Shown in pieces: positions 15,575-42,000 of a DNA stretch of 64,000 nucleotides (within the stretch, counting starts at the first letter, position 1; every line of letters starts with the position of its first letter). The notes beneath the pieces were generated by a model, which did no database searches, was not told the DNA's origin, and saw only the letters and a program-made list of their open reading frames with translations. Made by a program: the position numbers and the translations under genes. The stretch is from Lytechinus pictus. Lineage: Eukaryota. The stretch covers positions 28,954,001 to 29,018,000 of the forward strand of contig NC_087259.1 of NCBI RefSeq assembly GCF_037042905.1. The letters run 5' to 3'.

Positions 15575-18305
15575 TTAATACCTTCACCAACCCACACTCT
15601 CTCACTCCTACTTCCAATACTCACACCAACTCACACAACCCATTGCCACCCTACACACCATCTTCCACTGCTACTTCTAATACTCACACCAACTCACACA
15701 ACCCATTGCCACCCTACACACCATCTTCCACTGCTACTTTCAATACTCACACAACCCATTGCTACCCTCACACACCATCTTCCACTCCTACTTCCAACTA
15801 CTCACACAACCCATTGCCACCCTACACACCATCTTCCACTGCTACTTTCAATACTGACACCAACTCACACAACCCATTGCTACCCTCACTCACCATCTTC
15901 CACTGCTACTTCCAATACTCACACCAACTCACACAACCCATTGCCCCCCTCACACACCATCTTCCACTGCTACTTTCAATACTCACACAACCCATTGCTA
16001 CCCTCACACACCATCTTCCACTGCTACTTCCAATACTCACACCAACTCACACAACCCATTGCCACCCTACACACCATCTTCCACTGCTACTTCCAATACT
16101 GACACCAACTCACACAACCCATTGCCACCCTCACACACCATCTTCCACTGCTACTTCCAAATACTCACACCAACTCACACAACCCATTGCCACCCTACAC
16201 ACCATCTTCCACTGCTACTTCCAATACTCACACAACCCATTGCCCCCCTCACACACCATCTTCCACTGCTACTTCCAAATACTCACACCAACTCACACAA
16301 TCCATTGCCACCCTACACACCATCTTCCATTGCTACTTCCAATACTCACACAACCCATTGCCACCCTACACACCATCTTACACTGCTACTTCCAATACTC
16401 ACACAACCCATTGCCCCCCTCACACACCATCTTCCACTGCTACTTCCAAATACTCACACCAACTCACACAACCCATTGCCACCCTACACACCATCTTCCA
16501 CTGCTACTTCTAATACTCACACCAACTCACACAACCCATTGCCCCCCTCACACACCATCTTCCACTGCTACTTCCAAATACTCACACCAACTCACACAAC
16601 CCATTGCCACCCTACACACCATCTTCCACTGCTACTTCTAATACTCACACCAACTCACACAACCCATTGCCCCCCTCACACACCATCTTCCACTGCTACT
16701 TCCAACTACTCACACAACCCATTGCCACCCTACACGCCATCTTCCACTGCTACTTCCAACTACTCACACAACCCATTGCCACCCTACACACCATCTTCCA
16801 CTGCTACTTTCAATACTGACACAACCCATTGCTACCCTACACACCATCTTCCACTGCTACTTTCAATACTGACACAACCCATTGCCACCCTACACACCAT
16901 CTTCCACTGCTACTTTCAATACTGACACAACCCATTGCCACCCTACACACCATCTTCCACTGCTACTTTCAATACTGACACAACCCATTGCCACCCTACA
17001 CACCATCTTCCACTGCTACTTCCAACTACTCACACAACCCATTGCCCCCCTCACACACCATCTTCCACTGCTACTTCCAACTACTCACACAACCCATTGC
17101 TACCCTCACACACCATCTTCCACTCCTACTTCCAATACTCACACCAACTCACACAACCCATTGCTACCCTCACACACCATCTTCCACTGCTACTTCCAAC
17201 TACTCACACAACCCATTGCCACCCTACACACCATCTTCCACTGCTACTTCCAACTACTCACACAACCCATTGCCACCCTACACACCATCTTCCACTGCTA
17301 CTTTCAATACTGACACAACCCATTGCTACCCTACACACCATCTTCCACTGCTACTTTCAATACTGACACAACCCATTGCCACCCTACACACCATCTTCCA
17401 CTGCTACTTTCAATACTGACACAACCCATTGCCACCCTACACACCATCTTCCACTGCTACTTTCAATACTGACACAACCCATTGCCACCCTACACACCAT
17501 CTTCCACTGCTACTTCCAACTACTCACACAACCCATTGCCCCCCTCACACACCATCTTCCACTGCTACTTCCAACTACTCACACAACCCATTGCTACCCT
17601 CACACACCATCTTCCACTGCTACTTCCAACTACTCACACAACCCATTGCCACCCTACACACCATCTTCCACTGCTACTTTCAATACTGACACCAACTCAC
17701 ACAACCCATTTCCACCCTACACACCATCTTCCACTGCTACTTTCAATACTCACACAACCCATTACCACCCTACACACCATCTTCCACTGCTACTTCTAAT
17801 ACTCACACCAACTCACACAACCCATTGACACCCTACACACCATCTTCCACTGCTACTTCTAATACTCACACCAACTCACACAACCCATTGCCACCCTACA
17901 CACCATCTTCCACTGCTACTTCCAATACTCACACAACACATTGCCCCCCTCACACACCATCTTTCACTGCTACTTCCAAATACTCACACCAACTCACACA
18001 ACCCATTGCCACCCTACACACCATCTTCCACTGCTACTTCTAATACTCACACCAACTCACACAACCCATTGCCACCCTCACACACCATCTTCCACTGCTA
18101 CTTCCAATACTCACACAACCCATTGCCCCCCTCACACACCATCTTCCACTGCTACTATCAATACTCACACCAACTCGCACAACCCATTGCCCCACCCTCA
18201 CCCACCATCTTCCACTCCTACTTCCAATACTCACACCAACTCACACAACCCATTGCTACCCTCACACACCATCTTCCACTGCTACTTCCAATACTCACAC
18301 AACCC
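15575..18305. repeat. 2.7-kb minisatellite, 53-66 bp units
   Basis: Unit ACTCAC(ACCAACTCAC)ACAACCCATTGCCACCCT(C)ACACACCATCTTCCACTGCTACTT(C/T)CAAT, roughly 45 copies, with extreme C/A strand skew. Confidence 0.98.
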
Positions 18306-33000: not shown

Positions 33001-36000
33001 GGATATTTAACCTGTTGCTTACTGGAACCAAGTAGTTCTTATCTCCATGTAGAAAATCTAGGGATTTTCTTTTTTAAGTGAGTTTTAAATGACCTTGTTT
33101 TATTTTTAATTCGATCATTTAATTTTCCTGCTGAAAATGATAGTTTTAATGTTTCATCAACTTTCTTCAGGATTGATTTGAAACTAATACCATATGAGTG
33201 CATGTTCAATGTAGTATCTAGCTGGTATAAACAAGGAGATTCTATGACTGGAGTTCCAACAGTCAACAAATTTATTCAAGCAGCTGTTCATTTCTAAAGA
33301 AGCACAAAAGAAAGAACGGGAATAAGGACCCTTTTGATGTCCAGCTTCGAAGCCGCCAGTTTCAGTGAAGAAATCCGGGGGGTGACATTTTACGAATATT
33401 CATTTGTATCGATTTTCCATCTTCCATATTAATAACCAAACTGAAATTTGAATGCATGACAAAACATCAATAACCAAGCACTATTACGACGAGATATTTG
33501 CCCAGATTATATCAATTAACCTTTAATTAGTGAAAAAAGAACGAATTTGACCTTTACTGAAACCAGATTTTAACACTTTTCCGATCGTTTGCGGCGATTG
33601 AAAATTTTAAATGTGGTTGATGGAATATTGTTGTTCATTACTGTATATGGCTCAAACCCACTATCTCGGCGCAATTCTGAAATTTTGGTGTCGTTAAGGA
33701 TTCTGCTTATATTATTAAGAAATTAAACATTGCAGATGATGGTTCTTGCATCTCATCGCTTCGGTGGCACTTGCCGATAAAAATGAGACCCATTTTACCG
33801 GGAAATAAAGCCCGAAGAAAATAAAATGGCACACTAAATGTGGGATAAGTGTGAAAAAACCCCTGTCGCCAGAAAAGAAAATCTGTCATTTGAATGTTTT
33901 TTCATCAAATATTCACAAGACATCTTTCTAAAAATGCATTAAAAATAACCGTTTTTGATTGTCCATGTGAGATATTAAAGAAAAATTGTGTTGCTTTTGA
34001 TATGAATAATATTTTACATCAACCAAAATTTGTCCCAAATTATCTGTAACATACGTTACCATGTTTTAACGAAATGTGTTTTAGGGAAGAAAAGTCAGTT
34101 GTTCCATCGGAATAACGGTTTTCTGTTTCACAACAGATATAGAAACTACAACCGTGTAGATTAGCATTTAGATATTTGAACAATTTTGCCACACATGAAA
34201 AATCCTTTTTAGTGAAAAACGTATATTTAAGGAGTGTAACATACGTTACCATCGTTTGTGTTTATTCAGAGAAGCATGCTCATTTCATCTCTGTTTATTT
34301 TTAGGTATTGACGTATGAAAGCTAGTAAATCGAGAAAAAAGAAAAAATAACCACTCTAAGTTTGAAATATATGACAATTTATAAAAAAATTTGTAACCTA
34401 CGTTACGTAACATACGTTTCCAGTTTGATATATTCTTCTAATTAACCTATGTAAATCCATTTCCCCGGAACATATACATTGGTACCCATCTTAAACATTT
34501 AGTTCCCTCTACGGCAATTGAAAGAAACCTTAGCAACCTCATGGAATCCACATAAATGAATGGTGCGCTTGTTGGCTAGTCATCTTAAAGTGTTCAAAAA
34601 CAAATAGGTAAGTACAGAGATCGATATCATATTTGTTTTTAGATATATTTACATTATTTTTTTGAAATATTCACCACTTACGTGCATCTCTTAAAAACTC
34701 ATTTAGTAATTTCATGTGAAATTAATCAATTTTACTTTTAGAAGGCATTATACCACGCCTTTTGTGGTAACGTATGTTTCAGGTGATGGTAACGTAGGTT
34801 ACCATATTAACATGTATTCTATATAAACAATATTTTAGAAACTAGTGGTATGTATCAACCATAAATTCATTATAAACTTTCAGAAGGGCACTTCTCTTGT
34901 AAATTGACGCTCTTAAACCGTATGAAAATTTGAACATTTTCTTCTTTATAAATAGTAAGAAAGCAACATCCATGGAATATTTTATGTCAATGACAATGTA
35001 GCTGTCATTTTAATCAACATTATCTTGAAAGGAAATGTTTACAAATGAATACCAAATTTGCACATCGATAACCCTAAATCATAAGATAAGCTTCTGGTAC
35101 CTATTTCGTAAACTGGATTTGATTATTTTTATCGATTATTTCCAAAAAACTAAGACAAGTTGTGGTAACGTATGTTACATGTATCATTCAAGTCAACATT
35201 ATGAGATAAGTCAGTCAATGCCAATGGATAATGTTGGATTAGATATTATATTTTCAAACACACATTTTTATTTATATCTTGCAGGGATGGGCAAGACAAG
35301 GGCCGAAATTCAGGCCGCCTATCGACAGCGGAAACGACAGCAAATTGGAGATGCTGCTTTCCTCCGCGCAGAACGGGAGAGGCAGAAGAAATACTACGTT
35401 CGAGTTGAGAATTTGCCAAAGAAAAAAGCAGAAGAGAGAAGGGTCCAAGTGCGGTCAAGAGTACAGAAGCACAGAGTAAGGGTCAAGAAAGTGAAGCAAG
35501 ACATGTACAATGAACGACATCAGGAAAACATTGATAGCTCAGTGATTGAAAGCGATACAACGCAAGACTCTGCGCTGTCAGATGTATCTTACATTGCTCC
35601 GCGTAGTCCTCTGAAAGTAAAGATGGCATTTCCGGTCAAGAAGAGGAGAAATCGTGTTAGCAGGTGCCTGAGCAATGCTCACCGGAGAATCGAGGCACTT
35701 ACTCTTAAACTCCAGGAAACAGCAAAGGGAAAACGCAGAGTTCAGAGAAGATACCAGAGGCTTCGTAAGAAACTTCCAACGTCTTCAACACCATTTCATG
35801 GGGTTTCGAGGAACACACCACGCAGTAAGACAGACAGCCAACTCAAGAAATCTGGTTTAGATCCTAAGTCTGTTCCAGCTGAAATTAAGAAGAGGCTACT
35901 CTTCTTCAACGCGGTAATCCAGGAAATACAATCTACCGCTGGATCCAGCACCAACCAGACAAACAGGGCGAATCTTCATAAGCTGGTGGCAGGAGCCAAG

Positions 36001-39000
36001 ATATTGAAGAAATACCGCCTGCTGAGGATGGTACAGAAGGGTACTGGGCTGGGAAGACGCAACTTGTCAAAGGCAAACACAAATAATGTCAGCCAACGCA
36101 AGCAGCTCCGGCGTTCTTGGTACATGCTACACGAAGAAGTTGTAACTTTCATGGAGAGGGAAGACAACTCACGCATGTGTCCCGGCAAGAAGGACTGTTG
36201 CAAAACAGATGACATGGGGAACAAGAAACAGAAGAAGTTTCTTTGCGATTACATGTCAAATCTCCATGCCAAGTACATTGCAGAAAATCAAGACAAACGC
36301 AAGGTATCCCTGTCTGCATTCCAACGTGTCCGCCAAACGCGATGTCCCCATATTAAGCCTGTTCAATTCTTGTCCAGGAACCTTTGCTTATGCCCAAGAC
36401 ATCAGAACATGGCCTTGAAGCTGAAAGCAATGAAATCCATGGGTTTGCCTGTAGTCGAAAATCCTGATGAATTCATTAGACGCCACACCGATGATGAGGT
36501 ACATGATCTCCTCTCTGATTTGCAGCCTGGTGTGATTCAGTTTGAAGAATGGGCTAGAGTTGAGGCTGATGGCAGAAAGAAGATTAAACTCATCAATGTG
36601 TCACTGGCGAAGCAGGAGTTCATCGCTCGCCTCAAAACGAGCATCCAAGAATTTCGTCAACACGTCTTCCGAATTAAGAAACAGTTTGAAGCACTTTCTG
36701 ACTGCAAGAAGAATTTGCCCAAAGGAGAATGCTTGGTGCAAATGGACTTTGCCGAAAATTACACATGTGTGCCCTTAGAAGAAGTACAAAGTGGGTATTG
36801 GAATCAGGAAGGTGTAACAATCCATCCGCTGGTGGTGTACTTCCGGGAGGACGACAACAATCTCAGTCATCAGAGCTACGTTGCTGTGTCTGATGAAAAG
36901 GGGCACAATTCGTCTACAGTAATTGCCATTCTGAACCAAGTTATCCCCCGCCTGAAGAAATTGGTCCCACAGCTTTCGAAGATACACTACTGGACTGATG
37001 GGCCCACATCCCAATACCGCAACAAAACTATCTTTTCTTTGATAGGGGACCATGTTGAGGTGTACGATGGAATCCATGCCCAGTGGAACTTCTTTGAAGC
37101 TGGACATGGAAAGGGGCCATGTGATGGTATCGGGGGTACTGTAAAACGCATGGCCGACAATGCTGTCAAGCGCAATGCTGTAATACAAGACGCAAAGGAT
37201 TTCTTTGCCTGGGCATGCCAGGAGCACGGTTGCGAGAATGATTCAAAGATTGACTTTTTCTTTGTGAGCAAAGAAGAGTGTGTCTCAAGCAGTGAACTCA
37301 TTGCACAAAGGTGGGCATCAGTCAAGACCTTCCCAGGAACTTTGCAAGTGCACGGCGTCATTGGATACGACAAAGGGGTTCTCCTCAAAGACGTCTCTTG
37401 CTACTGCGCAAAATGCCGTGTAATGAACCCTGCTGACACCAATCAAGTCGAGCATATGTGTGAAGGTTGGCAACTTCGCCGTTTCGTGAGGGGGCCCATG
37501 AAGCAAGTTCAGCCAGACAAATGTGACGACCCTGAGAGAGATGGTGTTGGAGAGCCTACTGGTGTAGTGAATAAGACATTCAACCAATCGTCTACCAGCG
37601 TTCCAGTGCAGTATCACACTGATGACTGGGTTGCTGCTGTTTATGAACAACGATGGTACTTGGGGAAAGTGCTCGAATCCGACAAAGATGATGTTCACGT
37701 GGACTTCCTCACTGAGTGCACAGGTCCTCGAAATCAGAACAAATATAAATGGCCAACCAGCAGTGACTCAATCTGGGTAGCAAGGAAAAACGTACTGTGT
37801 TCCGTAAACCCACCCAAACGCGACTCCATTTCCAAAAGATTTTTTGTTCTCTCTGACAACCAAAGGGCAATGGTCGAGCAGGCGTTCAAAGCGTTCAGTT
37901 CTCGCTCATAAAGTAGAACACTCCCATTTGTTCATAGCCCACCGGACTCAAACAATTAGAGTGCTTTAATTCCATTGTGTAGGGGTAATCCATCATTATT
38001 CGGTAGAATCTGTTTTCATTGTTGCACTTTCGATCTGGTTGCTGTTATTCGATTTCTGTTGCTGTATTTCAATTTATATGAGATTATGATATTTGAGATG
38101 AATAGCAAAAGAAAAATGCTATTTAGATATACAGAAATCTGTTATTTTTTATTCATGGAAACAAGATGCAAAAATAACTGTTACATTCCAAAGACCATTT
38201 TGAGCAATATCCTGTGCATAAATCAAACCAAGTAAATGATGTAACGTTAATCTGGGGTGGGGGTGGGGATGTAGATAGGCTGCTCAAGAGCATGGAACAA
38301 TTATTTAAGGAGACGAGTATGCCTTATGTAAGTAGATGTACGTAGTTGTTAAATTTCAGTTGAAAATGTTACCTAACATTTGAATTAAGGGATTTTTTAT
38401 GAGATATCACCCGATGAAAGGTTTGCTTATAGTTATTCTATTATTTCCTTTAAAGTGTCAAGTTACCTGTTAGATCTCTTTGACTAACGCAATTATTCAT
38501 TTTCTTACGGACAAATGTTTGAAAGTAGATCCATTTCTCCATCTAAACTTTGATATTGTAATACGTATTTTCACATTTAGGATTGTAACATACGTTACTT
38601 ATGAATATAGGCATTCACTCAGCGATGCATGTGTCTACCGTGTTTTTAATTTTATGTGGCACATGGACATATCGAATGTATATAATGTGTGCATTATAAG
38701 AATGAAAGTGGTTAACAGGAGAAGTGTTATAATTTCTCATGAAAATTGATGTAATATTCGCAAAAGTTATTACATAACAGAGTTATTGGATTGCATATCC
38801 TAACTAAATAAAACATATACAGTTACTAAATAAATTTGAAAGGTAAAATGATAACAAAGTACACGGGCTCGAAAGAAAAATACCAGTTTATTCATTTCAT
38901 ATGGTTAATGTCATATATATTCTGAAAAGTGATATTGTTCTCCTCTGTAAGGTTAACTCATTCTTCAAGTAACCTACGTTACTCATCTACGTAACTTACG

Positions 39001-42000
39001 TTACCAAATTTTATTCAACTGGTACTCGTATTCTATTTCCCCAAGATCACTTCTTCATGCCAAAGTTATATAATGTGACTTAATATTTTTAGATCATGGC
39101 TGGAAAAAAAAATCAGTCTTTAAAATTTCATTACCTATCAGACAAGATATGATGACACTTAGATAATTATTCAGCCTTCATAATGTAGAAGTTCGTATTT
39201 TGTAAAAACTGCAGAACAAGATCACCTATATTCCACTTAAACGTTTTCCAGTCTCTTTGTTTAATAGCTTAACTGGAATCTAGAGCAAAGGCCGTGATCT
39301 GAAAGTGCATATTAAAATGTATTTTTCCCCTTTTAGTGTCTCGGGTCATGGTAACGTAGGTTACACCGTGTGTTTTGCATCCACAAGATGAAACATGTGT
39401 AATTCTTAAACCAAACAATGTTGAATGCTCATCTCTTGGAATTTGAAACTTTGTTGTTTAATGTTTCATTATAAAATAAAGACAAACTTGCTACTGAAAC
39501 TTTATTTTTTTTTAAATTGAATGTTCTTAAATGCGCCGATTTACTGGTTTTGACCCTTATGCCAGATGAGTGCCCGCACATGCCCAGTCGAGCAAATTTG
39601 AGTCAAATTTCATAGTTTATTTTTGCATGCCTCCGAATTATGTACTACACATATAACCAGACCAAGATGCGGCGAAAAAGTAATTATCATCACAAAAGCA
39701 TATTTCCCTTTCTGTATGACCTATAGCTGCGGAGTCATGCGGGAATCATTTGTCTACACAATTGCAAGAGATGTTGAGCAAAGTGCATGCCTGACATACT
39801 TTCTGCTGGCGGCTTCGAAGCTTGTTCAAAGGGATTTTGTTTGCTGTTACTCCATCTCATTTAAACCTCCTTTGTATAAATAAAGTTCTGATGTGTTTCA
39901 ATTATTGAAAGCTGATGCAAGATACTTATCGTTTTGTTTTACTTTAATAGTTTAGAGTAAACCAACTTAACACACTTTTGGGTTTGTATTTTTCACTTGT
40001 CAAATAGGAGAGATTTATTTAAGTGACATTCTCTTTTTCATTTTTGTCTTCATATACAGTGATTTCCCAATTCCAGATGACTACCCAAACTTCATGCACA
40101 ACAGACTTGTGCTAAAGTACTACCGTCTCTTCTGCGATCGTTTTGATCTTCGCAAGTACATTCGCTTTCACACTAAAGTAGATTCTGCTGTCTTTGCTGA
40201 TGACTACAAGGAAACAGGACAATGGAAAGTTACAACAACCCATCAAGATACTGGCAAGTCAGTGACCGAGATCTATGATGCTGTGCTTGTATGCACAGGA
40301 CATCACTGTACGCCATACACGCCAGATTTTGAAGGTGAGACTTTTTAATTTGGATGAGATTTCCTCTCCATTTTGTTATTTCACTCAACAAAAATAGGCC
40401 TTTAAGATTTTAGCATGTTTATTCGTACCAGTGAAAGGTGTTCTTTTATATACTTGGGTTATAAATGAGATGAGGTACTTCCAAAGGTTCCTTTGAATTT
40501 AGGTGGCAGCGGTGGGATTTGTCTCATATCATCAAGAATGACATTTTACCTGCATCATGATGTGTTAGATATAACAGAATCTCTATATCACTGTACACTA
40601 TATATCCCAGAGTTTGAAGATGAGAATGTAAGGGAGTGGACATTGTACATACATTGTATTGGGGCAACCCAGAATCCAATGTTTGGGGATAATTTGTATC
40701 TGTAAACCACTTGAATATGTTGTTCATATGCGATAAGCGCCATAAGAAAGTAGAATAACACTCTTTTTATTATTCATATATATGATATCTATCTGTCTTA
40801 TCAGTTGCACTCTCTCTCTCTCTTTCTCTGTCATCTATGATGTTAGGACTGAAGGAGTTCAAAGGTCAGGTTCTTCATACGCACGATTACTTGAAGCCGG
40901 ATGGGTTTGCCAAGAAACGAATCATGGTAATTGGAGTGGGTAACTCTGGATGTGATGCTGCTGTGGAGCTTAGTAGGTGTGCATCCCAGGTCAGTTTGAG
41001 GTCATGGTCATATAGGGAGGACTGCCCCTCCCTCCAAAAAGTGCAACAACAAAGAAACACACTAAGAGCACTGGAAAACTAGAAATTAAAAATGTCCACC
41101 CTTCGATTTCCTATAGTATTTGATAAAAAAAACTCTACTATATTGTAGCAAACAAAACTTACACAGAATTATTTTTTTTTAAAGAAAGGGAACTATCTGC
41201 CACACAATTTGTCAGGAAAATGTGTAATAACAGCAAATGAAGATGAAATAAATTACTGAAAAATGCCTGTCCATTTATAGTGTGGTCCCACACGTTGTTT
41301 CCTGTGTTAGCTACACCAGGCAAAGCCTGTGGTAATGAAATTAATATATGGTATCAAGCAAGCCTGAATTATTTTCATCAAACTTTGTTGTTCTAAATAA
41401 GCATTCTGGCATTGGATAAACACTTAAGGATTGCGTCGAACTATCTTATCAAATTAGATTTCTATACCAGAATTGGAATGCAGCTTTTAATAGCTATCAA
41501 AGTGAATATGTGCCAAATGATTCTGGTTCGAAGATGTATAATTGCTGAGAAAGTGACAAACCAAGCTTGATATTATTCCAGCCAGATTTTGGGTCTTTTT
41601 CCAAACAATAACAATATTAGCTACCCCACATGGTAATTCTTTTTTCATCTTAGATTTTATGATGCGCTAGGTTCATGTACGAGAAATCTGTGTCACAAAG
41701 GTTAGCGATTAATTGTACGCTTGATTTTCACAATTGATTTTACATTGTAGTCAATGCAATCAGTCTTAGCAAAATGTTCTACGATTATTGCTAAGCTTTG
41801 TTATGGGCCCTGGATCTAGATCTACCATGATAGGTTGACAAGTATATTTTAAAGACTCTCATGAAAGTATTGTTCACTGCATTACAGGTACTTGACTTTA
41901 ACATCTCACTGAATTTAAGGTCATTGGTAACAAGAGGTCATGAGTTCATGATTGAAGAAATTGGGTGTGTATCAAACTTCAAATGGCAGAGGCGTAAATT

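What the first reader, a model, noticed from the sequence alone, without database searches (positions are those of the whole stretch)
33343..39822. Intact Sola2-like transposon with non-canonical ends and an AGCT target site
Seen: a stop-free 874-aa transposase with three candidate catalytic Asp, perfect 13-bp TIRs starting 5'-TCGAAG, AGCT on both flanks and arms of about 1.9 kb each side. Known: Sola elements make 4-bp TSDs, and described Sola2 ends are, as I recall, 5'-GRG. Inferred: a recent, possibly still active lineage with different termini. The reconstructed empty site (CCCTTTTGATGTCC-AGCT-TGTTCAAAGGG) is loosely palindromic, hinting at target preference. The exact boundary is ambiguous because AGCT and TCGA are both palindromes.
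Basis: partly seen in the sequence, partly recalled or inferred. Interest (0 to 1): 0.7.

Follow-up and report, generated by a model that had tools for sequence, protein, structure and literature searches.

The report
Sola2 transposon nested in a MITE
An intact, probably still mobile Sola2-type jumping gene of a sea urchin has landed inside an older 0.73-kb repeat, and the "unusual ends and AGCT target" belong to that repeat; the transposon's own ends and its 4-bp AT-rich target duplication are ordinary for its family.

Summary
The boundaries are wrong.

The inverted repeat and the "empty site" around it lie inside a ~740-bp MITE-like repeat at 33232-39873. This repeat has CAAGGAG...CTCCTTG ends, a 7-bp TSD and more than 250 genomic copies at 92-95% identity. 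In 24 of 24 full copies aligned it is uninterrupted.

The transposase belongs to a 5,908-bp element at 33649-39556, nested in that repeat. It has imperfect ~33-nt TIRs (GGCTCAAACC.../...GGTTTTGACCC) and a 4-bp AT-rich TSD (ATAT/TTAT).

A second 99%-identical copy on another chromosome ends at exactly these points, with TSD TATA/TATA. A sea-cucumber relative has the same termini and a perfect AAAT TSD.

The protein has an RNase H-like core with D487/D571/D613. Its three motif blocks and their spacing match published Sola2 transposases.

Signs of recent activity:
- two intact reference copies
- a non-reference insertion site in a public run
- a spliced 5'UTR contig

Verdict: a canonical Sola2 family member, low copy and probably active. 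There are no non-canonical ends and no AGCT target. The case is ordinary but clean.

The parts
33225..33231 (.). Left 7-bp target-site duplication (GTATAAA) of the outer MITE
   Evidence: It is identical to 39874-39880. In 24 of 24 aligned copies there is a 7-bp TSD, 20 of them exact.
33232..33648 (+). Left part of the outer MITE-like repeat (5' end CAAGGAGATTC...).
   Evidence: 29 other loci align from about 33222-33237 (one from 33265) straight across the junction to the right part, at 90-95% identity.
33343..33359 (.). Left arm of the perfect 17-nt inverted repeat (AGCTTCGAAGCCGCCAG). It is internal to the MITE and is not a transposon end.
   Evidence: I22. It is conserved together with its flanks in the MITE copies.
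33645..33648 (.). Left 4-bp TSD (ATAT) of the inner Sola2 element
   Evidence: The uninterrupted MITE reads CTGT-ATAT-GCCAG in 20 of 23 other copies. RNA reads of uninterrupted MITE copies skip 5912 nt, which is 5908 + 4.
33649..39556 (+). Inner autonomous Sola2-type transposon, 5,908 bp
   Evidence: The second copy on G000:C5 is 98.9% identical over exactly this span. Only two copies of either end exist in the genome.
33649..33681 (+). 5' terminal inverted repeat (GGCTCAAACCCACTATCTCGGCGCAATTCTGAA)
   Evidence: (I1). The terminal GGSTCAAAACC is shared with the Holothuria relative.
34046..35178 (.). Five GTAAC-N4-GTTAC palindromic boxes in the 5' arm (34046, 34236, 34393, 34789, 35165)
   Evidence: there are 9 boxes in the window, all inside the inner element, against 0.04 expected by chance. 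The boxes are also present in the C5 copy, in families B and C, and in the Holothuria element.
34608..35284 (+). 677-nt 5'UTR intron (GTAAGT...TGCAG), ending 2 nt before the start codon
   Evidence: One contig of run X1 joins 34605/7 to 35283/5 with GT..AG ends. The splice sites were read. An in-frame TAA at 34586-34588 in exon 1 excludes an upstream start.
35287..37911 (+). Transposase CDS, 874 aa plus stop. Catalytic Asp codons: D487 at 36745-36747, D571 at 36997-36999, D613 at 37123-37125.
   Evidence: RNase H-like core at residues ~454-656: Z 9.1 to the Mos1 catalytic domain and Z 8-9 to retroviral integrase cores.
38585..39364 (.). Four GTAAC-N4-GTTAC boxes in the 3' arm (38585, 38969, 38991, 39351)
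39524..39556 (-). 3' terminal inverted repeat (reverse complement GGGTCAAAACCAGTAAATCGGCGCATTTAAGAA)
   Evidence: (I1).
39557..39560 (.). Right 4-bp TSD (TTAT), one mismatch to the left copy ATAT
39557..39873 (+). Right part of the outer MITE (3' end ...AACCTCCTTT).
39874..39880 (.). Right 7-bp TSD (GTATAAA) of the outer MITE

Best explanation
Window 33649-39556 is a full-length autonomous Sola2-type cut-and-paste DNA transposon of a sea urchin.

Host species: three NCBI Lytechinus pictus proteins are encoded 100% identically elsewhere in this genome, so the host is most likely L. pictus.

Where it sits: the element inserted at an ATAT site inside a pre-existing ~740-bp MITE (33232-39873).

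Anatomy:
- one gene, with a 5'UTR exon, a 677-nt intron and a single coding exon
- an 874-aa transposase with an N-terminal basic helical region, a CxCxxH...CxCxxC cysteine/histidine set, an RNase H-like DDD core (D487, D571, D613) and a C-terminal PWWP/Tudor/SH3-like barrel
- ~33-nt imperfect TIRs beginning GGC/GGG
- about 1.64-kb arms studded with GTAAC-N4-GTTAC palindromes

Inferred mechanism: the transposase binds the TIRs, and probably the subterminal palindromes. It excises the element and reinserts it with a 4-bp staggered cut at AT-rich sites.

Shown here: anatomy, boundaries, TSDs, fold, motif conservation, copy number, a spliced contig and a non-reference insertion.

Inferred only: catalysis, what binds the boxes, and present-day activity.
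For: **Boundaries**
- The chromosome-5 copy aligns only to 33645-39557, at 98.9%.
- Junction-spanning queries split cleanly: the inner parts hit only C5, the outer parts hit the many MITE copies.
- The composite 33347-33646 + 39558-39818 aligns end to end to about 25 uninterrupted copies.
- The repeat extends to about 33232 and 39873, with a 7-bp TSD in 24 of 24 copies.

**4-bp TSD**
- C5 has TATA/TATA.
- The window has ATAT/TTAT, against a single ATAT in the uninterrupted MITE.
- The Holothuria leucospilota relative (48% aa identity) has GGGTCAAAACC...GGTTTTGAGCC with AAAT/AAAT.
- Reads of uninterrupted MITE copies skip 5912 nt, which is 5908 + 4, with 4 letters that fit either side.

**Family**
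- D487 is invariant, and D571 and D613 are at least 90% conserved, among 36 homologues.
- The blocks MDFAEN / WTDG..QYRNK / GHGKGPCDG match the order and content of Sola2_DFa-2 (MDFKEN / WSDGAKHFK / YHGKSDVD) and Sola2_PPa-1 in PMC3627910, supplement 3.
- The Asp spacing is 84/42 here against 87/43 in DFa-2.
- In the predicted structure (pLDDT 78) the three Asp sit at the end of beta1, after beta4 and at the start of the helix after beta5.
- The core aligns to the Mos1 transposase catalytic domain (Z 9.1, rmsd 3.5, 164 residues) and to integrase cores.

**Youth and activity**
- Only two copies exist, and both are intact.
- They differ by 33 substitutions, 6 of them in the ORF (p = 0.002 against the arms).
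- An X1 contig leaves the 3' end into a flank that maps uniquely to G000:C12:14279911, where the assembly has no copy.
- A spliced GT..AG contig and sparse RNA reads cover the element.
Against: - No statistical alignment to a reference Sola2 transposase could be run. Repbase and Dfam are not available, and the published sequences could not be passed to a tool. Family assignment therefore rests on motif order, spacing, TSD length and fold.
- The window copy's TSD has one mismatch.
- The 5' terminus is GGC, not GGG.
- The non-reference insertion rests on one low-depth contig (depth 2.6) of a run of unknown library type, with a 1-nt indel right after the junction.
- Within the ORF the two copies differ by 4 nonsynonymous and 2 synonymous changes, which gives no clear sign of purifying selection.
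- Expression is very low.
Confidence: 0.88

Rival explanations
1. One reading: the element spans 33347-39818, with 13-bp TCGAAG... TIRs and an AGCT 4-bp TSD. This would be a Sola2 lineage with new termini and a new target.
For: A perfect 17-nt inverted repeat brackets the ORF (I22). About 0.006 such pairs are expected by chance.
Against: - The other copy of the transposase-bearing DNA lacks these ends entirely.
- The 'TIRs', the AGCT and the 'empty-site' flanks are conserved together in about 25 short copies that carry no transposase.
- In all 29 loci the homology continues about 115 bp and 55 bp beyond the supposed ends.
- No copy ends at 33347 or 39818.
Confidence: 0.02
2. One element, not two: the ~740-bp repeat is an internal-deletion derivative (MITE) of the 6.6-kb unit 33232-39873. 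The transposase would then mobilise CAAGGAG ends with 7-bp TSDs, and the chromosome-5 copy would be a truncated fragment.
For: MITEs usually arise by internal deletion of autonomous elements. Here the short form equals the long form minus its middle.
Against: - The 'middle' has its own TIRs exactly at the junctions (I1).
- It is flanked by a duplicated 4-mer that occurs only once in the short form.
- The C5 copy has the same two ends with TATA/TATA, in unrelated flanks.
- A sea-cucumber homologue has the same termini with AAAT/AAAT and no MITE around it.
- The MITE copies are 5-8% diverged, while the two inner copies differ by about 1%.
- A 7-bp TSD does not fit Sola.
Confidence: 0.03
3. The ORF is a domesticated, host-retained transposase gene rather than part of a mobile element.
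For: The ORF is intact and carries fewer substitutions than the arms. It has a spliced 5'UTR. NCBI annotates paralogous families as ordinary 'uncharacterized protein LOC...' genes.
Against: - TIRs and TSDs are intact at two unlinked loci.
- There is a third, non-reference site.
- At least six related families with intact ORFs, each in several near-identical copies, are in the same genome.
- The sister species holds about 98% copies in different flanks.
Confidence: 0.04

Closest known systems
Sola2 group of the Sola superfamily of eukaryotic DNA transposons (Bao, Jurka & Kapitonov 2009, as used in Repbase). The reference proteins seen here are Sola2_DFa-2 and Sola2_PPa-1 of dictyostelids (PMC3627910).
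   Same: - A single large transposase of about 870-890 aa.
- A DDD triad in the blocks (M/C)DF.EN, W.D(G/N)...(F/Y)(K/R) and HGK..(C/V)D, with nearly the same spacing.
- A CxC..H-like motif upstream of the core.
- Short TIRs that start with G.
- 4-bp AT-rich TSDs: AWWT, ATAT and AAAT in the paper; TATA, ATAT and AAAT here.
   Different: - The termini read GGSTCAAAACC rather than GAG/GAA.
- The arms are long (1.6 kb) and carry repeated GTAAC-N4-GTTAC palindromes.
- There is no Fanzor passenger gene.
- The C-terminal domain is PWWP/Tudor-like.
- No E-value-based alignment to the reference sequences was possible here.
Related Sola2-like families in the same genome and in other deuterostomes and molluscs. 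All are annotated only as uncharacterized proteins: Lytechinus pictus LOC129283486, LOC135153666 and LOC135156857, Holothuria leucospilota HOLleu_07881, and hits in Branchiostoma, Haliotis and Mytilus.
   Same: The domain order and the invariant residues are the same. The Holothuria element shares the terminal 11 nt, the 4-bp TSD and the palindromic boxes.
   Different: They share 35-58% amino-acid identity with this protein. The 38-41% families lack exact boxes, and one of them ends GGGTCATTCTC.
Mos1/mariner transposase and retroviral integrase catalytic cores (PDB 2f7t, 7ouf, 1cxu)
   Same: They share the RNase H-like fold, with acidic residues in the canonical positions on beta1, after beta4 and on the helix after beta5.
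   Different: Sequence identity is only 10-16% and Z is about 9, so they share a fold but not a family. The TSD is 2 bp (TA) for mariner.

Membership tests
Sola2 (Sola superfamily) | Transposase with a DDD catalytic triad in an RNase H-like fold | tested here: met
   D487 is invariant and D571 and D613 are at least 90% conserved in 36 homologues. Their topological positions in the model are canonical. The core gives Z 9.1 to Mos1 and Z 8-9 to integrases.
Sola2 (Sola superfamily) | Sequence similarity to reference Sola2 transposases, as opposed to Sola1, Sola3 or other superfamilies | tested here: inconclusive
   Three motif blocks match Sola2_DFa-2 and Sola2_PPa-1 in order and spacing: 84/42 here against 87/43. 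This was read by eye only. No alignment statistic and no comparison with Sola1/Sola3 profiles could be made. Pfam has no Sola model. A profile search did not reach the dictyostelid proteins.
Sola2 (Sola superfamily) | 4-bp target-site duplication | tested here: met
   C5 has TATA/TATA, the window has ATAT/TTAT, and Holothuria has AAAT/AAAT. The joint skips 5908 + 4 nt.
Sola2 (Sola superfamily) | AT-rich target, as in the AWWT/ATAT/AAAT sites of the dictyostelid Sola2 elements | tested here: met
   The observed sites are TATA, ATAT and AAAT. The probable non-reference site begins TACT. With only 3-4 sites, any preference is weakly sampled.
   The ends are 5'-GGC... and ...CCC-3' (GGG on the other strand). 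Holothuria has GGG/GGC and another L. pictus family has GGG. These are G-initial and compatible with GRG at one end. The original consensus could not be read, because Bao et al. 2009 is not held.
Outer repeat: MITE of an unidentified superfamily | Short non-coding element with TIRs, a fixed-length TSD and high copy number | tested here: met
   - Length is 721-754 bp.
- Ends are CAAGRAG...CTCCTTG.
- A 7-bp TSD of pattern nTnnnAn is present in 24 of 24 copies.
- The first-look searches gave 257-307 candidates.
- No autonomous partner was sought.

The most novel reading that the evidence does not exclude
This two-copy family is currently transposing in Lytechinus pictus. Its transposase would recognise not only the TIRs but also the array of GTAAC-N4-GTTAC palindromes, which has been conserved from sea urchins to sea cucumbers, through its N-terminal basic helical domain. 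That would make it the first experimentally tractable, naturally active Sola2 element, and a candidate transgenesis tool in a laboratory echinoderm.
Probability: 0.3. Interest if true: 0.5.

Novelty: new member of a known kind. Interest (0 to 1): 0.25.

Why it matters
- The claimed novelty, new Sola2 termini and an AGCT target, disappears. It is a textbook nested-insertion trap, in which a host repeat's internal palindrome mimics TIRs plus a TSD.
- What remains is a clean, intact, very low-copy Sola2 element with defined ends, gene structure and catalytic residues.
- There are signs of recent movement in a sea urchin that is used as a genetic model.
- No Sola transposase has, to my knowledge, been shown active or solved structurally. 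A young intact copy with conserved subterminal palindromes is therefore a reasonable starting point for biochemistry.
- In kind, however, it is an ordinary member of a known superfamily.

Tried and rejected
- Pfam scan of the protein: only noise. Pfam has no Sola model.
- Reading Bao et al. 2009 and Yuan & Wessler 2011 for the canonical termini: neither paper is held.
- The machine-read 'Alignment of the Sola2-Tpases' supplement is garbage text and was not used.
- A profile search with alignment A1, meant to reach named dictyostelid Sola2 proteins, returned only the same metazoan set.
- The protein atlas gave a weak lead to DUF7869 (score 0.82). The Pfam scan did not support it, so it was not pursued.
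- The look-up of encoding contigs for the L. pictus proteins and for P0006 returned no DNA.
- A 3-bp TSD model (element GGCTC...GACCCT) fits the two urchin copies but fails on the Holothuria element, so it was rejected.
- The ends of the other L. pictus families mostly lie beyond the 1.5-kb flanks that were fetched. Only one end, of the L017/L018 family, was recovered.
For that reason the DNA upstream of the C12 site was not read, and I did not try to get it another way.
- The organism-B flanks come from separate contigs and give no paired TSD.
Full report
**1.
- The + strand ORF 35035-37911 contains the 874-aa frame that starts at ATG 35287.
- A perfect 17-nt inverted repeat, AGCTTCGAAGCCGCCAG / CTGGCGGCTTCGAAGCT, lies at 33343-33359 and 39806-39822 (pair I22).
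- About 0.006 such pairs are expected by chance in 7.6 kb of this composition. The repeat is therefore real and needs an explanation.

**2. The inverted repeat is not the transposon's end**
- A six-frame search of the window's own genome found a second, essentially identical ORF on contig C5.
- Aligned to the window, that copy matches only 33645-39557, at 98.9% over 5.9 kb. Nothing matches outside this span.
There the left piece abuts the right piece directly.
- The composite 33347-33646 + 39558-39818 aligns end to end with about 25 of the 30 fetched loci.
- Queries that straddle the junctions split cleanly. The inner 250 nt hit only C5, and the outer ~50 nt hit the many short copies.
- The inner ends alone have exactly two genomic copies.

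**3.
- In all copies the supposed flanks ('GACCCTTTTGATGTCCAGCT' and 'AGCTTGTTCAAAGGGATTTT') are conserved as well. One subfamily reads GCCT...ACCT instead of AGCT...AGCT.
- Homology continues to about 33232 and 39873 in 29 of 29 loci.
- A multiple alignment places the true ends at CAAGRAGATTC... and ...AACCTCCTTG. A 7-bp direct duplication flanks 24 of 24 copies, 20 of them exact, with the pattern nTnnnAn. In the window it is GTATAAA, at 33225-33231 and 39874-39880.
- The outer unit is therefore a 721-754-bp MITE-like element.

**4. The inner element**
- It spans 33649-39556 (5,908 bp).
- Its ends form an imperfect ~33-nt inverted repeat: GGCTCAAACCCACTATCTCGGCGCAATTCTGAA against GGGTCAAAACCAGTAAATCGGCGCATTTAAGAA (pair I1).
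- The uninterrupted MITE reads ...CATTACTGT-ATAT-GCCAGATG....
- The window reads ...CTGT-ATAT-[element]-TTAT-GCCAG... This is a 4-bp duplication with one mismatch.
- The C5 copy sits in unrelated DNA with TATA on both sides.
- A 3-bp model would also fit these two copies, so I looked for an independent relative.
- The Holothuria leucospilota homologue (P0005, 48% identity) lies in a presenilin intron. There a 5,460-bp element begins GGGTCAAAACCACTAAAA, ends TTTTAGTGGTTTTGAGCC, and is flanked by AAAT/AAAT. This supports the 4-bp model and shows that the terminal 11 nt are conserved across echinoderm classes.
- RNA reads from uninterrupted MITE copies skip exactly 5,912 nt (5,908 + 4), with four letters that fit either side.
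- One end of a more distant family in this genome (L017/L018, 38% aa identity) also ends ...GACCC.

**5. The protein**
- Pfam finds nothing, which is expected because Sola has no Pfam model.
- Homologues at 25-93% identity occur in sea urchins, sea cucumbers, amphioxus, abalone and bivalves, and all are unnamed.
- In a 36-sequence alignment D487 is invariant. D571 and D613 are at least 90% conserved, within the blocks MDFAEN, HYWTD(S/G)PTSQYRNK and GHGKGxCDGxGG.
- The published Sola2 transposases of Dictyostelium fasciculatum and Polysphondylium pallidum (PMC3627910, supplement 3) show the same three blocks in the same order: LMDFKEN / FWSDGAKHFK / YHGKSDVD, and CDFKEN / FWCDNARHFK / YHGKSECD.
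- By my count the Asp spacing in DFa-2 is 87 and 43 residues, against 84 and 42 here.
- Those dictyostelid elements have 12-22-bp TIRs that begin with G, and AT-rich 4-bp TSDs.
- An AlphaFold2 model built on the alignment (mean pLDDT 78) gives the canonical beta1-beta2-beta3-alpha-beta4-alpha-beta5-alpha order at residues 481-628. The three Asp sit at the end of beta1, after beta4 and at the start of the last helix.
- A structural re-alignment gives Z 9.1 (rmsd 3.5, 164 residues) to the Mos1 catalytic domain and Z 8-9 (rmsd ~3, ~140 residues) to retroviral integrase cores. Residues 775-874 resemble a PWWP or integrase C-terminal barrel at Z 7.6, which is below the level at which such a match is secure.
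- I could not run a statistical alignment to a reference Sola2 sequence. Membership on that point is well indicated but not formally proven.

**6. Gene structure and expression**
- One contig of run X1 joins ~34607 to ~35285 across a GTAAGT...TGCAG intron of 677 nt, which ends two bases before ATG 35287.
- Exon 1 has an in-frame TAA at 34586-34588. The 874-aa start is therefore right, and the 958-aa extension listed is intronic.
- Raw RNA reads of the same species cover the element only sparsely, at about 1-2 reads per 200-nt bin from 6% of a run, and on both strands.

**7. Age and activity**
- The two reference copies differ by 33 substitutions. Six are in the 2,625-nt ORF (4 nonsynonymous, 2 synonymous) and 27 are in the 3,283 nt of arms. 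The ORF deficit has p about 0.002.
- Both ORFs are intact.
- The host MITE is 5-8% diverged from its relatives, so the insertion is much younger than the MITE burst.
- In run X1, a 1,715-nt contig carrying C5-like variants leaves the element's 3' end into TAC-TATCATTAGTCTC....
- That flank occurs once in the assembly, at G000:C12:14279911, as TACTTATCATTAG.... Searches show no copy of the element there.
- This looks like a non-reference insertion with a probable TSD of TACT. It rests on one low-depth contig with a 1-nt indel.
- A sister species (organism B) holds copies about 98% identical in other flanks.

**8. Wider context**
- The genome holds at least six related families with intact ORFs, several of them in multiple ~99% identical copies.
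- Three of their products are 100% identical to NCBI proteins labelled Lytechinus pictus. This identifies the host species with high likelihood.
- The arms carry nine exact GTAAC-N4-GTTAC palindromes, against 0.04 expected, and there are none elsewhere in the 64-kb window.
- The same boxes occur in the C5 copy, in the 58% and 51% families and in the Holothuria element, but not in the 38-41% families.
- They are plausible subterminal transposase-binding sites. This is inference only.

**9. Verdict**
- The locus is a canonical, young and possibly active Sola2-type transposon nested in an older MITE.
- It is a new member of a known kind. Beyond correcting the boundaries, the interest is modest.

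Noticed in passing
window 33232-33648 + 39557-39873; copies in L033-L061: A high-copy (more than 250 candidates) ~740-bp MITE with CAAGRAG...CTCCTTG ends and a strict 7-bp TSD of pattern nTnnnAn. It has a long-range internal palindrome and two subfamilies (AGCT...AGCT and GCCT...ACCT). It is transcribed: X21 RNA reads span the uninterrupted form. Its superfamily and autonomous partner are unknown.
   Followed up: partly
window 34046-35178 and 38585-39364; L031, L003, L011, L012, L020, L062: GTAAC-N4-GTTAC palindromic boxes: nine in the window element, ten in the C5 copy. They are conserved in related echinoderm Sola2 families that share only 48-58% protein identity, including a sea-cucumber element. 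They are likely subterminal binding sites.
   Followed up: partly
G000:C12:14279911 (outside the window): A contig from public run X1 joins the element's 3' end to this site, where the assembly has no copy of the element. This is a probable insertion polymorphism.
   Followed up: partly
L003-L019 (G000, several chromosomes): At least six further Sola2-like families with intact 830-890-aa ORFs. One of them has eight copies at about 99.3% identity. NCBI annotates three of the products as ordinary 'uncharacterized protein LOC...' genes of Lytechinus pictus.
   Followed up: partly
window 15603-18305: A 2.7-kb C-rich minisatellite with units of ~53-65 nt and higher-order periods of 118 and 494 nt. 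GC skew is -0.84.
   Followed up: no
window 36859-37151: In polyA RNA of the sister species (X24), a few reads match only this ~290-nt stretch of the catalytic core and continue into unrelated sequence on both sides. This may be a fragment embedded in another transcript.
   Followed up: no
L062 (Holothuria leucospilota CM055963.1): The sea-cucumber relative, with intact TIRs and an AAAT TSD, sits on the opposite strand inside a gene called as presenilin.
   Followed up: no
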